Assembly (NCBI RefSeq): GCF_963921235.1
Contig: NC_086103.1
Coordinates: 122,822,001-122,886,000, forward strand
Length of the DNA stretch: 64,000 nt
Reading direction: 5' to 3'
Source: Mobula hypostoma
Lineage: Eukaryota
The notes below the pieces were generated by a model. It ran no database searches, was not told where the DNA came from, and saw only the letters and a list, made by a program, of their open reading frames with translations. The position numbers and the translations under genes are program-made. Below are positions 18,330 through 60,140 of this stretch, piece by piece. Positions within the stretch are counted from its first letter, which is position 1, and each line of letters begins with the position of its first letter.

Positions 18330-18770
18330 GTTCGCTACCACTACCTCACTCTTGACAAAGCTTACATTAAAAAAAATTTGAAATGCTACCGCCCGATCTA
18401 CGGAGTAGACGCGCTCATCGAGATGAGCAACCCCAACGCGGTCGCATCCTTTCGAGCCCACAACCGCACTTCACGACAGCCGCGCTTCTTTTGCGACTCG
18501 GTGACGTCGCGGCTGTGTGGAGTGACGTCGACCCTTTGTGTGCATCATGTCGGAAAGCGCGGCACGGGGAGACATGCCGGCCAAGAGGCAGAAACTGAGC
18601 GATGAGAACAGCAATCCTGACATGTCGCCAGACGAAAATGTAAATGAAATTAAGGGGGATAGGGGCGGGGAAGGGAGGCGCTTTGCCACCAACTTTCCAA
18701 GAATGAGACTTTAGTTTAAAATGTCTGTCACCCGGACTTAGTCCCGGGGAGGCCTTTGCCGTGTGTGTGT
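18330..18770 (+). promoter_or_regulatory. CpG island/promoter of EED exon 1 with two CRE-like TGACGTCG sites (18502-18509, 18523-18530)
   Basis: Dense CpG; repeated GTGACGTCG just upstream of the ATG. Confidence 0.75.
18547..18639 (+). CDS. EED: EED coding exon 1 ([31 protein letters not shown]), opposite in orientation to the other EED exons
   Basis: Matches human EED N-terminus [38 protein letters not shown]; ends in phase 0 after DEN with GTAAAT donor, the conserved exon 1 boundary. Confidence 0.9.
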
Positions 18771-19789
18771 GGTAGTTGGGGTGTAGGTGGGCAAAGAACG
18801 AACAACCTCCAACTTACCCACCGATGATGCTCTCTGCACTCCCTCGGATCTTCACTGTGAGCTTGATCTGGAGATAAGGGTGGGTGGTAGAAGAGAGAGC
18901 TTTAAAATCCATGACCCTGTAGTTATACATGGGAAGGGGATCTTCCAATAATGAGAATAAATTACCTATTTTTTTAAAAAAAACTCACCCAGTTCATGAT
19001 CTGGGCTTCATTTCATTTAATTGTATGTTATTAACTGGTAGGTACCATGGTGTGGTGGCATCTTTTCCACAAATCTTGGTGTTGCTTCCATCTACTGTGC
19101 ACACACTGTGACTACAAGCTATCATTCTTCATATTGGTCCAAGTAAAACCTAACTGTTTGACTGTTTGGTTTGAGTTCGGTACGTCATCAGCCCAAATTC
19201 TTTTGTTTCTGTACGAAAAGGAATTTAAGAGAACTGGTGGTATATTCGTCCCTGCACCGTGTGGCTCTTGGTGTATTGCTAGCTAAATACGGTCGTAACA
19301 TGTAGATCAGGAACATACTATTTGCACGGCTTCTTTCCTGGTTCCTTCTACTTGTTTTGGTCAGTCATGTGTCTGATGTACACAGATCCACTGTTTTCCA
19401 CGCTTTTAAGATATCAAAGAAGGGTTTACCTGAAGAATTGATTGATTGTACGTTTATACAAACGAAGTGAGTCTGCTGACGACATACCCCTGTAAAAAAC
19501 TAAACAGCAAAACAGCCAGCTTCATTCATTGTAATAATGTGGATCCTTATAAATTGCCAATAATATAGACAACTATAGCTATTTCATGCCTTTATCATTC
19601 CTTTCGGAACTTTTTGCAATATGCTAATACACATTTTTTAGTTCTTAATGATTTTTTATTGGTTATAACTTATAAGTATGATTTCTAAGTTTATACATAG
19701 CAATACTGATTGCTTGTTATTCAGGTACAAATTCTTGATTCCTATGGCTAATGTTGAGCAACAGTAAAAAAATTAATTCTTAAATGTTT

Positions 19790-19942
19790 ATTAGTAGTCA
19801 TAGTCATACTTTATTGATCCCGGGGGAAATTGGTTTTCGTTACAGTTGCACCATAAATAATTAAAAAGTAATAAAACCATAAATAGTTAAATAGTAATAT
19901 GTAAATTATGCCAGGAAGTAAGTCCAGGACCAGCCTATTGGC
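19790..19942 (-). mobile_element. Young Rex1/Babar 3' end
   Basis: Reverse complement of 28655-28805 including the (GACTAT)n tail. Confidence 0.75.
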
Positions 19943-22900
19943 TAGCGCTAACAAGATGTGAGTTGATGTAGTATCTGCTTTATTTATGAATTGGAAGCTA
20001 AGTATTCTGTGGTCTGGTTTGGATGTTACAGTTACTCATTGTAGAACCTTTAATTTTGCATTAGTACTTTTAGGTATTGCTCTGCTCTACTATGCTATGT
20101 ATTTACAGTCTTGGTTAGGTTCACTGCATGATGACAATGCAATTATAGAGAGGCAAAAGTAATTTTTTTTATAAATTACTGCAGCTTGGATCTGTAAATT
20201 TATTTGTCACTGCTATGAAGTTTTCAGATACTGGGGTGGAGATATGTCTCTACCAAAGGAGGTATAAGGTACTCCCTCCCTCCGATAGCCTGCAGATCAC
20301 CCATGGGTATGGTATACTTAGCCTCCCTCCAATCAGGATCACGTGGAGCCATGGGAGCAGGTGGTGCATATCACAAGTCCTGGTTATGCAACCACTGGCA
20401 CTAGGCAAACCATCTCTGAAGCATATTGATAATGGCTGGGGTCACCCCTCTTACAAAGACACTGTCCAGAAGAAGGCAAAGATGGCAAGTCACTTCTGCT
20501 GGAAAATTTGTCAAGAACAATCATGGTCAAAAGACCATAATCGCCCATGTCATACAACACGGCGTATGCTGCTGATGATGAAATATTGATCACCTGACGT
20601 AGCATTTCACTATTTAGGAAACCAAATCCACCTTCAGTTGTTTGGTTAGGTGGAATGTTCATTATAAATGTTCTTTGGGTTTATGGGTTTTGTTTTTGCC
20701 TATTGATTTAGTAGCAATAATCAAGTTCAGATATGTGCTTCTACTTTGATGTAATGGGCTGACACTCCTGTGATGTTTTTTCCCTTTTAAACTAACTTAT
20801 GAAAGATACAGTAAAATATAACTGATGAAATAGGAAAGAAATATAATGTATCTAGCTAGAAATATATCTTAACTATCATTGAAACTCCTAGTCATAGTCA
20901 AAGCATAGAAGCAAGCCCTTTGGTCAAAAATAATGACAGTATTGTTCGCTGCACTGTTTGCAACAGTGACTTTTATTTTGTAATTTATTTTTTATTGAAG
21001 TTCATCATCAAACAAACATTTCCGTAAGATGTATTTCAGACATTGTACATATATATGCCACAAGTCTCCACATAATATTTGTCTGAGGTATACACTTATA
21101 GAAAAGAGAGGAAAGTAAGAAACAAAAAGAGAAAACTATGTACAAGTAGGGAGTGATTTTTTTTACAACATATTCATTGATTTTTGAGAATAAAATCAGG
21201 CCTATGAGGTGTTATGTAGTTAAATCATTTTTCCCAGCATGAATCAAATTGTTCCAACTTATGATGAACAAATGCTGTTATCTTCTCCGTTCTGTAAATG
21301 TCCATTGTAATTTCCATCCATACATTTAAAGTTGGTACTCTCCTGTGATAACCGCTTCATGGTAAGAGTCTTTTTACCAGCCACCAGCAGTATATTCATT
21401 AAATATTTATCTATTTTCAACCATTCTTGAGGTACTTACCCAAAATACTTTCTAAGGGTATTTCACATTTAAAAATGTCTTGTAGGGCACTGTGTATCCC
21501 ACTCCAATAGTCTTTGATAACGGGGCAATCCCAGAAAATATGATAATGGTTTGCATTTTGATCTCCACTATTTCTCCAGTAAACAGGGAGGTTACTATCA
21601 TAATGGGATTTCTGAGAGGGTGTAATAAAAATATCTTATCAAGTTTTTCCATCCAAACTCCCTCCCTCCCTGTGAACTGGTACACTTCCATTGATACCTC
21701 CATATTATTGTCCATTCTTCCTCAGATATAATTATCCCTCCTTCCTTCTCCCATTTTGTTTTAATGTATGAAGTTGAATGTGTTTTAGGATTTGACAAAC
21801 CCTTATACACGCTTGAAATTATTCTACTACTGTTAGCTCAATTATATGCTTTTTTAAATAGCTCTGTCAATCATGTACTTGCCTTGGTTACATTTTTAAC
21901 CGTCCTATTAACATACTGTCACATCTGTAAATAAAAAGTCTTGTTTTTCTAATAAGTGTTTCTCTTTAAGCATTTCAAAACCAAACAGTGTTCCTTCTTT
22001 CATTATGTTGCCAAGAACTTTATTCCTTTATTCCTTTAGCTGTCTAGTCCTTAAATCTAGCATCCAGTTTATTCGGCATAAAATCCGAGTCATATGCACA
22101 CCATGTAAGAATTGCAATATCTCCCTCTAGTTTATGTTCTTTTGTAATAGTTTTCCATACTTTAAGAGTCCTTTTCACTCATGGGTTGTCAATAGTATTT
22201 ATGTACCTTTTTAGGTTGTTATCAGCCAAAATTGCCTGTATGGGGATGGGAAGTATCCCCTCCTCCATGTTTTTCCATTGAGCGTCATATAATGGCTTGC
22301 ACCAACATATCACAGCTCTCAACTGTGCTGCAAAATATTAATCTCTAAGAGAAGGTAGGCCCCATTCTCCCCCCCCCCCCTTTCCTTGGCTAATTGCAAA
22401 GTTTTGAGACAAACTCTAGGCCTTTTACCTTGCCATATATATCTTGATAACATTTTATTCTATTCATTGAATTGATTTTGATTAATCTCTATTGGTAGGG
22501 TCTGAAAGAGATATAATATTCTGGGCAGTATATTCATTTTAATAGATTCAATCCTTGAACTGAGACTAAAAAAAGGAATTAGGTCCCGTCTTGTTATATC
22601 TTCCTTAATTTTTTTTATATAGGCTGATAATTGCATTCTGGTAATTTTGCCAAGTCTTTTGGCATAATGATGCCCAAATATTTGAAAGACTCTTTGCCAT
22701 GCCCAGGGATATCTACTTTCAATTTCTTTTGGTGGGCTATAGTTAAATGAAAGTAATTGGGTTTTATCTATGTTGATCTTGTATCCTGATAATTGACGAT
22801 ATTGTTCAAAGGATTGCATCAATTTAGGTAAAGAGTATGTTGGTGCCCTAGATAGATCAAGATGTCATCCGCGTAACAGGCTAATTTATGCTCTGTCCCT

Positions 22901-59388: not shown

Positions 59389-59514
59389 CTTAATGCATTG
59401 CATGGAGATAGGATTAATAATTCTGATAATGCCCCTTGATCCTGCCACAGCCAGGAGAGGATGGCTTGTATTACTGTCATATGTCCAAGCACACGTGTAA
59501 AAGTTTTCATCTGT
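59389..59514 (-). CDS. EED: EED exon 5 ([42 protein letters not shown])
   Basis: Manual translation; 126 nt; CAG/GTGAGT; includes the aromatic-cage Tyr (human Y148). Confidence 0.97.
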
Positions 59515-60074
59515 CTGTTCATCTCCAGAGTTAATGTCAATACTGAAAGAAATGTAATTCAGTATACCTTTGCTCTTTTACTCTTTCTAATTGCCTCCAA
59601 ACTGCACTAGGAAACAATCTGACTCAGAACGAGATTTATCCAAGACAATTTTAAACAGCATAATTTTGTTTAAATCTCTCCAGAGGTATACATCCTAATG
59701 TTAGGGGTGTCATTCATTAATATGTGGTTACATTCAAGTTTACCTCTCTTTTGATATTAATTATACTGTAGCTTTTACGAACTCTGGTTACCTGCTCATG
59801 AAAATTTTACTTGTTCAAATCATTTAAAAGCATTATCCCCTATGCTGGCTTTTTACCTGAAAAGTACAAGAATATTTAACTTTGGAACAGTTATTTATTA
59901 AGATTCTATTGCTAACTACCCTTGGATTTTACTCCCTTCTCCCAAAAACTGACCAACCAGCTGAAAATGGCTCTATACAATTGCAGACATTAAATGATAA
60001 TACATACTAACTAAATTTGTTTCTCATAAATTGTCAACTGCACATCCATTATTATGTGATTGTATTAAGGATAC
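59515..60074 (-). other. U12-type (minor spliceosome) GT-AG intron, EED intron 4
   Basis: 5' site GTATCCTT; branch-like CATTAAC close to the acceptor; no polypyrimidine tract. Confidence 0.85.
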
Positions 60075-60140
60075 ATCAGCGTCCACATAAGACTGCAATA
60101 ATCGTATTTCCCCTTGAGAGTGACATTCATAAAGTGTGAC
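60075..60140 (-). CDS. EED: EED exon 4 ([22 protein letters not shown])
   Basis: Manual translation matches vertebrate EED; TAG acceptor; GTATCCTT donor; 66 nt. Confidence 0.96.

What the first reader, a model, noticed from the sequence alone, without database searches (positions are those of the whole stretch)
18330..60140. EED exon 1 is inverted and lies beyond the 3' end of its own gene body
Seen: an intact EED exon 1 (start codon, conserved peptide, correct phase-0 GT donor, CpG island) on + at 18547-18639. Exons 4-12 are intact on - at 60140->44408, so the two parts face each other about 26 kb apart with no N-gap. No exon 2 or 3 was seen on either strand. Known: cis-splicing cannot join these parts, EED is an essential PRC2 subunit, and human EED and HIKESHI are tandem on one strand, as exons 4-12 and HIKESHI are here. 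Inference, in my order of likelihood: (a) assembly or haplotype inversion of the exon 2-12 block; (b) a real inverted duplicate of the promoter and exon 1 driving a convergent antisense transcript, with the true exon 1 beyond 64000; (c) a real split gene that needs trans-splicing.
Basis: partly seen in the sequence, partly recalled or inferred. Interest (0 to 1): 0.85.

Follow-up and report, generated by a model that had tools for sequence, protein, structure and literature searches.

The report
Extra inverted copy of EED's first exon
In the Atlantic pygmy devil ray, a second, flipped copy of the start of the essential gene EED (promoter plus first coding exon) most likely sits between EED and its neighbour HIKESHI, while the working first exon lies just outside the window, so the gene is probably not split or misassembled.

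Summary
An intact EED exon 1 (ATG, 31 codons, GT donor, CpG island) lies on + at 18547-18639. Exons 4-12 lie on - at 60140-44408 and HIKESHI on - from 16275 down. There is no N and no exon 2 or 3 in the window.

The window matches assembly GCA_963921235.1 (sMobHyp1.1, Mobula hypostoma). There the called EED gene gives the full 434-aa protein from a one-strand coding range of 29,409 bp. That puts its ATG near coordinate 73,816, outside the window; I could not read that DNA.

DNA contig depth over 18228-19131 is about twice that of the flanks, and contigs branch at 19132, as expected for two identical copies. Two skates, an electric ray and a chimaera have one exon 1 and none in the EED-HIKESHI spacer, so the copy is lineage-specific.

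The block 17497-19118 is collinear with the skates' EED upstream element, promoter, exon 1 and intron-1 element. The only spliced RNA contig carrying exon 1 is ordinary EED mRNA, so RNA cannot separate the copies. Activity of the copy rests on weak signs.

Assembly error remains possible (about 0.15). Trans-splicing is not needed. This is a partial gene duplicate of modest interest.

The parts
17497..17770 (+). Upstream conserved non-coding element of the copy block, in two pieces (17497-17540 and 17634-17770). It is homologous to sequence 3.9-7.4 kb upstream of the EED ATG in skates, in the same orientation.
   Evidence: blastn against L002 (2455-2634) and L003 (5961-6216). The DNA contig over 17570-18207 has single-copy depth of 14.6.
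18380..18546 (+). CpG-island core promoter and 5'UTR of the exon 1 copy. It carries two TGACGTC motifs, at 18502-18508 and 18523-18529.
   Evidence: Alignment A1 with the true EED 5' ends of Amblyraja and Leucoraja: both GTGACGT motifs and the -47..-1 stretch are conserved. GC 0.57 and CpG o/e 1.18. A skate EED mRNA aligns from 18518.
18547..18639 (+). EED coding exon 1 (copy): ATG plus 30 codons, ending in phase 0, with a GT donor at 18640-18641.
   Evidence: 31/31 residues identical to RefSeq EED P0374. RNA contigs end or splice exactly at 18639/18640.
18924..19118 (+). Intron-1 conserved element that accompanies exon 1 in other batoids.
   Evidence: blastn: 18992-19118 matches L002 11050-11169, 19054-19118 matches L003 11030-11094, and 18924-19099 matches Narcine L006 10282-10446. 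All lie just downstream of the true exon 1, in the same orientation.
18228..19131 (.). Tract that behaves as two identical copies in the reads.
   Evidence: one 904-nt DNA contig (X1) with no mismatch at depth 23.7, against 11-15 in unique flanks. The next DNA contig and an RNA contig of X11 both start at 19102, which is 30 nt (k-1) before a branch point at 19132.
44408..60140 (-). EED exons 4-12 (functional gene body), with the stop codon at 44408-44410.
   Evidence: exact translation to P0374 residues 114-434, with GT-AG introns throughout. RNA runs of the same species hold 64-74% of the words of exon 12 plus 3'UTR. Collinear with skate and Narcine EED.
6939..16406 (-). HIKESHI (5 coding exons, ATG at 16275, RNA-supported first exon up to about 16400). 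It is tandem with the EED body and divergent from the exon 1 copy.
   Evidence: tblastn. RNA contigs over 16243-16406 at depth 42-230.
41762..41845 (-). Spacer block 'a', conserved with the skate spacer just downstream of EED. It marks the upper bound of the lineage-specific 25 kb.
   Evidence: matches L002 34217-34299 and L003 29359-29441.
16516..16619 (-). Spacer block 'b', conserved just upstream of HIKESHI. It marks the lower bound of the lineage-specific 25 kb that holds the copy.
   Evidence: matches L002 35756-35856 and L003 31225-31325.
57420..57668 (+). Inferred last coding piece of a 113-aa gene called on the plus strand of this assembly, antisense to EED intron 5. It lies inside an 839-bp insertion (57291-58129) that skates lack.
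   Evidence: a 113-aa gene on the strand opposite to EED, whose low end maps to window 57668; a stop codon ends exactly at 57668, with an open frame from 57315. AG at 57418-57419 gives 31 + 82 = 113 aa; the insertion is absent from skates; no Pfam family.

Best explanation
The piece at 17.5-19.1 kb is an inverted partial duplicate of the 5' end of EED. It contains an upstream conserved element, the CpG-island promoter with two TGACGT motifs, the 5'UTR, coding exon 1 with its donor, and the conserved start of intron 1.

It was added in the stingray or devil-ray lineage to the EED-HIKESHI spacer. That spacer has grown here from 2-4 kb to 28 kb. The copy now lies head-to-head with HIKESHI and points toward the 3' end of EED.

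The working EED gene is an ordinary collinear gene on the minus strand. Its own exon 1 (same peptide) and exons 2-3 lie beyond the window, with the ATG predicted near coordinate 73,816.

About 0.9 kb (18228-19131) is still, or again, identical between the two copies. This suggests a young duplication or gene conversion between inverted arms.

Shown: the anatomy, the homology, absence of the copy in four outgroups, the one-strand gene call, and the doubled depth. Inferred, not seen: the distal copy itself. Weakly supported: that the copy's promoter fires and produces RNA running antisense into EED.
For: 1. The window is assembly GCA_963921235.1. Setting the EED stop (44408) equal to the end of the called EED coding range predicts that the opposite-strand 113-aa gene ends at 57668. 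A plus-strand stop codon with a 354-nt open frame ends exactly there.

2. On that assembly EED is called with product P0374 (434 aa, N-terminus identical to the window exon 1). Its coding range is 29,409 bp on one strand. The ranges are ATG-to-stop, as checked on L001 and L002. Since exon 4 to stop is 15.7 kb, the ATG lies about 13.7 kb above exon 4, outside the window.

3. The second Mobula assembly gives 28,725 bp, nearly the same. Neither assembly has HIKESHI within 10 kb upstream of the ATG. This argues against a start at exon 2 and against a whole-gene flip.

4. The DNA contig 18228-19131 has depth 23.7, against 11-15 in the flanks. Contigs branch at 19132 in DNA and in X11 RNA.

5. Amblyraja, Leucoraja, Narcine and Callorhinchus have EED and HIKESHI in tandem with a 1.8-4.1 kb spacer. 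Where the 5' end is in the fetched DNA (the two skates and Narcine), there is a single exon 1; none of the four has an exon-1-like piece in the spacer. Hemitrygon is also tandem.

6. The block is collinear with the skates' EED 5' region over at least 1.6 kb and lies between conserved spacer blocks a and b. One inverted duplicative insertion explains the layout.

7. Low-depth RNA contigs (3-5x) run from exon 1 to 19552 and cross into copy-specific sequence. Unique DNA upstream of the promoter has zero depth.
Against: The distal exon 1 was never seen, because DNA of that assembly beyond the window could not be fetched.

A RefSeq model can in principle be completed from transcripts when an exon is missing from the genome. 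The full-length product is therefore not absolute proof of an upstream exon 1.

The doubled depth rests on one contig in one run and could be a library bias.

The upstream element 17497-17770 has single-copy depth. Either the duplication is old and only partly homogenised, or the history is more complex.

X7's RNA contig 19012-19552 crosses 19131 without a break. A single-copy intron 1 would also produce this.
Confidence: 0.7

Rival explanations
1. Assembly error with a single exon 1. In this reading the real genome has one EED exon 1, and the Nanopore-based assembly has misplaced and flipped either the 5' block or the exon 2-12 block.
For: The assembly was built from raw Nanopore reads with NextDenovo, polished, run through purge_dups and curated by hand. 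The window alone shows an arrangement that cannot be cis-spliced. X7's RNA contig crosses 19131 unbroken.
Against: There is no N and no long near-identical inverted repeat in the window that could seed a flip.

The layout cannot be derived from the outgroup order by one inversion. It would need a real whole-gene inversion plus an assembly flip, or a 55-kb misplacement.

Hemitrygon keeps the tandem order, and neither Mobula assembly has HIKESHI within 10 kb upstream of the EED ATG. The coding ranges in the two independently made Mobula assemblies are nearly equal (29.4 and 28.7 kb), although one of them would have to lack intron 1. Doubled depth and the branch at 19132 would be left unexplained.
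Confidence: 0.15
2. False duplication. In this reading the copy at 18.5 kb does not exist in the animal and is an assembler artefact, such as a haplotig remnant.
For: Duplicated BUSCOs of 2.4% are reported for the assembly. Another inverted duplicate was noted elsewhere in this genome by the scan (untested).
Against: Read-derived contig depth over the tract is about twice that of the flanks, as expected if the reads contain two copies. The copy is embedded in unique sequence without gaps. DNA and RNA contigs join the tract to the copy-specific right flank: 19102-19288 in X1, 19012-19552 in X7 and 19102-19330 in X11.
Confidence: 0.05
3. A real split gene. In this reading the only exon 1 is on the opposite strand and is joined to exon 2 by trans-splicing.
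For: EED mRNA contains an exon 1 that matches 18551-18639 perfectly. The window arrangement forbids cis-splicing from this copy.
Against: A one-strand gene call gives the full protein. There is evidence for two copies. Trans-splicing of an essential vertebrate housekeeping-type gene has no precedent known to me. All outgroups are collinear.
Confidence: 0.01

Closest known systems
Partial (5'-end) segmental duplicates of genes, i.e. orphan promoter plus first-exon copies
   Same: The copy carries a promoter, 5'UTR, first coding exon with donor, and flanking non-coding homology. It is absent at the orthologous site in outgroups. It can seed chimeric or non-coding transcripts.
   Different: The copy is inverted and lies only about 55 kb from its source, immediately past the 3' end of the same gene. 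About 0.9 kb of it appears to be sequence-identical to the source.
Inverted segmental duplications that flank invertible segments (human Xq28 FLNA-EMD repeats, F8 int22h)
   Same: Two inverted arms tens of kb apart bracket a gene segment. Identity is kept up by exchange between the arms.
   Different: No inversion polymorphism has been shown here. The arms here would each carry a usable promoter and exon 1, so a flip would not break the gene, unlike F8.
Convergent natural antisense transcripts
   Same: A promoter downstream of EED points back into its 3' half. A plus-strand gene model overlapping exons 6-12 exists in the annotation.
   Different: No strand-resolved or junction read was seen here. 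The 113-aa reading frame ends in a lineage-specific insertion with no known domain and may be a by-product of annotation.
Canonical vertebrate EED-HIKESHI-CCDC81 tandem locus
   Same: The EED body and HIKESHI are tandem on one strand, as in Callorhinchus, skates, Narcine, Hemitrygon and human.
   Different: The spacer is 28 kb instead of 1.8-8.4 kb, and it holds the extra inverted EED 5' block.

Membership tests
EED orthologue (PRC2 WD40 subunit) | Coding sequence gives the EED protein | tested here: met
   Exons 4-12 equal P0374 residues 114-434 exactly. Exon 1 equals residues 1-31.
EED orthologue (PRC2 WD40 subunit) | Conserved synteny with HIKESHI downstream on the same strand | tested here: met
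   for the window. for the chimaera, a stingray, two skates and an electric ray.
EED orthologue (PRC2 WD40 subunit) | Complete collinear set of exons 1-12 | not testable with these tools
   Exons 2-3 and the predicted upstream exon 1 lie beyond coordinate 64000.
Partial segmental duplicate of a gene's 5' end | A second copy exists elsewhere in the same genome | tested here: inconclusive
   The evidence is indirect only: a one-strand coding range of 29,409 bp that starts outside the window, about 2x depth, and a branch at 19132.
Partial segmental duplicate of a gene's 5' end | Homology extends beyond the exon into promoter and intron | tested here: met
   upstream element, promoter motifs and intron-1 element are all collinear.
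Partial segmental duplicate of a gene's 5' end | Absent at the orthologous position in outgroups | tested here: met
   No exon-1-like sequence in the EED-HIKESHI spacer of L001, L002, L003 or L006.
Convergent natural antisense transcript | RNA initiated at the copy and overlapping EED on the opposite strand | tested here: inconclusive
   A 113-aa plus-strand gene call overlaps the region. Low-depth RNA contigs without strand information reach 19552. The only spliced contig with exon 1 is EED mRNA.
Assembly inversion | Gaps or long inverted repeats at the breakpoints | tested here: not met
   No N. The longest near-identical inverted repeat in the window is a 191-bp palindrome elsewhere.
Assembly inversion | Long reads or Hi-C contradict the joins | not testable with these tools
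   Only short k-mer contigs of the runs were available.
Bidirectional promoter pair (with HIKESHI) | Divergent start sites less than about 1 kb apart | tested here: not met
   HIKESHI RNA reaches about 16400. The copy's 5'UTR starts near 18500, about 2.1 kb away, and each has its own CpG island.

The most novel reading that the evidence does not exclude
The two inverted promoter-plus-exon-1 arms bracket exons 2-12 of EED. Recombination between the arms could then flip the whole gene body, and EED would stay intact in either orientation, because each arm supplies a promoter and first exon in cis. The 0.9 kb of perfect identity would be the footprint of that exchange. Devil rays might carry both orientations as a harmless polymorphism.
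Probability: 0.08. Interest if true: 0.7.

Novelty: new member of a known kind. Interest (0 to 1): 0.3.

Why it matters
Read alone, the window suggests that an essential Polycomb gene is broken, misassembled or trans-spliced. The evidence instead points to an intact EED plus a lineage-specific inverted copy of its 5' end.

This matters in three practical ways. The copy will attract multi-mapped RNA reads. It has probably produced a spurious or chimeric 113-aa gene model. It could also mislead synteny or deletion scans in mobulid genomes.

Biologically it is a tidy example of promoter and first-exon duplication beside a housekeeping neighbour. It may cause antisense interference with EED, but that is not shown.

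Tried and rejected
1. I first read X10's 1204-nt RNA contig (exon 1 plus 1115 nt lying outside the laid stretch) as a non-EED antisense RNA, because exons 4 and 5 had zero RNA depth. I rejected this for two reasons. The 1115 nt after exon 1 end exactly 30 nt (k-1) into exon 12 of the 1305-nt coding sequence, so the contig is EED mRNA.

2. The 'joints' 18247 to 19795 in DNA contigs looked like a clean 1.55-kb insertion into a repeat. The anchors are only 20-24 nt, and the two repeats are different families, so I rejected this.

3. Look-ups of HIKESHI isoforms of skate and bamboo shark failed because they are not the longest products. I could therefore not list the genes just upstream of HIKESHI in this assembly.

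4. An exact look-up of the exon 1 read-through ORF found nothing.

5. Pfam found nothing in five ORFs: four taken as possible transposon ORFs and the 82-aa antisense ORF.

6. The scan's earlier notes hold nothing on EED or the neighbouring window.

7. A literature search for EED, HIKESHI and antisense found only an unrelated zebrafish eed paper.

8. I did not look up the spliced 113-aa protein, because it has no reference and would have had to be typed.
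Full report
**What is in the window**

The plus strand at 18547-18639 holds an ATG and 30 further codons followed by gtaaat. The peptide [31 protein letters not shown] equals the first 31 residues of the 434-aa RefSeq 'polycomb protein eed' of Mobula hypostoma, P0374. The same protein is annotated in Hypanus sabinus and Hemitrygon akajei.

The minus strand holds EED exons 4-12 from 60140 to 44408. All introns are GT-AG, and the spliced translation is identical to P0374 residues 114-434.

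HIKESHI lies on the minus strand from 16275 down to 6939. The window has no N. Exons 2 and 3 are absent on both strands, both by protein search and by nucleotide search with a skate EED mRNA.

The exon 1 piece lies in the spacer between the 3' end of EED and the 5' end of HIKESHI. It is inverted and sits 2.27 kb ATG-to-ATG from HIKESHI.

**Which assembly this is, and what its gene calls say**

An exact look-up of P0374 found it called on three ray chromosomes. The ranges reported by that tool run from start codon to stop codon. I checked this on Callorhinchus HIKESHI and on Amblyraja EED.

In GCA_963921235.1, EED spans 29,409 bp on one strand. A 113-aa gene on the opposite strand has its low end 13,260 bp inside EED. 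If the EED stop is set to window 44408, that end falls at window 57668. A plus-strand stop codon ends exactly there, behind a 354-nt open frame. Chance would give this in about one case in a thousand, so the window comes from that assembly.

A preprint identifies the assembly as sMobHyp1.1, the Atlantic pygmy devil ray. It was built from Nanopore reads with NextDenovo, polished, run through purge_dups and annotated by RefSeq with RNA-seq (10.64898/2026.10.27.761883).

Exon 4 to the stop takes 15.7 kb. The annotated ATG must therefore lie about 13.7 kb above exon 4, near coordinate 73,816 and outside the window.

The independently made assembly of the Atlantic manta (GCA_030028105.1) gives 28,725 bp. 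Neither assembly has HIKESHI within 10 kb upstream of the EED ATG. Hemitrygon has EED followed by HIKESHI in tandem, 8.4 kb apart.

**Outgroups**

DNA was available for Callorhinchus (L001), Amblyraja (L002), Leucoraja (L003) and Narcine (L006). All four have EED and HIKESHI in tandem with a spacer of 1.8-4.1 kb. The two skates and Narcine, whose fetched DNA includes the 5' end of EED, have one exon 1 at the normal place; none of the four has an exon-1-like sequence in the spacer.

The window is collinear with the skates on the minus strand from exon 4 through the 3'UTR. Collinearity continues to a spacer block 'a' (41762-41845) and resumes at a block 'b' (16516-16619) and HIKESHI exon 1.

Between a and b, the devil ray has 25 kb that the skates lack. 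Inside it, on the plus strand, the stretch 17497-19118 is collinear with the skates' EED 5' region. It contains an upstream element, the promoter with two conserved GTGACGT motifs, the 5'UTR, exon 1, and an intron-1 element that also follows exon 1 in Narcine.

No single inversion turns the outgroup order into this layout. One inverted duplicative insertion does.

**Copy number**

In DNA run X1, the contig covering 18228-19131 (904 nt, no mismatch) has a word depth of 23.7. Unique contigs on both sides have 11-15. The next DNA contig starts at 19102, which is 30 nt before 19132. This is the signature of a branch in a 31-mer graph. An RNA contig of X11 starts at the same base.

This is what two identical copies that diverge after 19131 would give. 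The left end of the tract falls in a high-copy repeat. The upstream element (17570-18207) has single-copy depth. The identical tract is therefore shorter than the homologous block, which fits an older duplication partly homogenised by gene conversion, or a more complex history.

**RNA**

RNA contigs end or splice exactly at 18639/18640. X10's 1204-nt contig carries 89 nt of exon 1 plus 1115 nt lying outside the laid stretch. Exon 12 starts at coding position 1179, so those 1115 nt end at position 1208. That is exactly 30 nt into exon 12, the expected end of a unitig at a splice branch. I therefore read this contig as ordinary EED mRNA.

Exons 4 and 5 showed zero depth in four RNA runs. One of those runs, X14, and three others of the same study hold 64-74% of the words of exon 12 plus 3'UTR.

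It follows that RNA cannot tell the two exon 1 copies apart. The only hints that the copy itself is active are these:
- Low-depth contigs (3-5x) run from exon 1 to 19552 into copy-specific sequence, while unique DNA upstream of the promoter has zero depth.
- The assembly carries a plus-strand 113-aa gene call.

An AG at 57418-57419 makes exon 1 (31 aa) plus 57420-57668 (82 aa) equal 113 aa exactly, so that model probably starts at the copy. Its last coding piece lies in an 839-bp insertion absent from skates and has no Pfam match. It may be an annotation by-product of multi-mapped reads.

**Verdict**

I put it at about 0.7.

An assembly error with a single exon 1 stays at about 0.15. It needs a real whole-gene inversion plus an assembly flip, or a 55-kb misplacement. 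It also leaves the depth, the branch and the near-equal coding ranges in two assemblies unexplained.

A false duplication is unlikely (0.05), because the reads themselves show doubled depth and join the tract to its local flank. Trans-splicing is not needed (0.01). The remaining probability, just under a tenth, I leave to histories not listed here.

**Comparison, novelty and the boldest reading**

This is a partial 5'-end gene duplicate, a known kind of event, in an unusual place and orientation.

The boldest reading still open is that the two inverted arms let the EED body flip by recombination without harm, since each arm offers a promoter and first exon. Nothing here tests this.

**What I could not do**

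I could not read the chromosome beyond 64000, see long reads, or look up the spliced 113-aa product. These are the decisive steps.

Noticed in passing
window 57291-58129: An 839-bp insertion in EED intron 5 that skates lack. It ends in a very high-copy repeat tail (RNA depth 1800-4400 at 58050-58248) with ATTAAA at 58085. The annotated antisense reading frame ends inside it.
   Followed up: partly
window 60376-64000: Homology to skate and Narcine intron 3 stops near 60375. The rest of the window has a strong positive GC skew, repeat-level RNA depth and endonuclease-like ORFs on the plus strand. This is probably a LINE insertion that pushes exon 3 out of the window.
   Followed up: partly
P0009, P0101, P0387 (sturgeon and paddlefish proteins): Deposited gene models of Acipenser sinensis and Polyodon fuse EED exons 1-10 to HIKESHI exons 2 onward (541-693 aa). 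These are read-through or mis-merged models made possible by the tandem order.
   Followed up: no
window 58249-60238 (read laying): Four RNA runs show exactly zero depth over the conserved EED exons 4 and 5, although one of those runs (X14) and three others of the same study hold most words of exon 12 plus 3'UTR. The human-like filter can erase whole conserved exons and mimic silence.
   Followed up: yes
window 16870-16899, 17053-17103, 18008-18102, 19712-19724: Clusters of differences between the DNA contigs of the probable source sample and the assembly, for example 7 in 95 bp. They flank the mismatch-free tract 18228-19131. Causes could be local heterozygosity or polishing.
   Followed up: no
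window 18190-18260, 4146-4395, 27292-27438, 44939-45182, 53977-54006: Copies of one abundant short repeat (…GATGCTGTCTGACCTGCTGAGTTCCTCCAG…). The same family is involved in the palindromic element at 27257-27508 that another note of the scan calls a hammerhead mini-retroelement. One copy sits at the left edge of the identical tract.
   Followed up: partly
HIKESHI proteins P0256, P0338, P0345-P0348: RefSeq lists many HIKESHI isoforms in skates and bamboo sharks that differ only in alternative C-terminal tails of 30-60 residues. The bamboo shark HIKESHI coding range is 41.6 kb.
   Followed up: no
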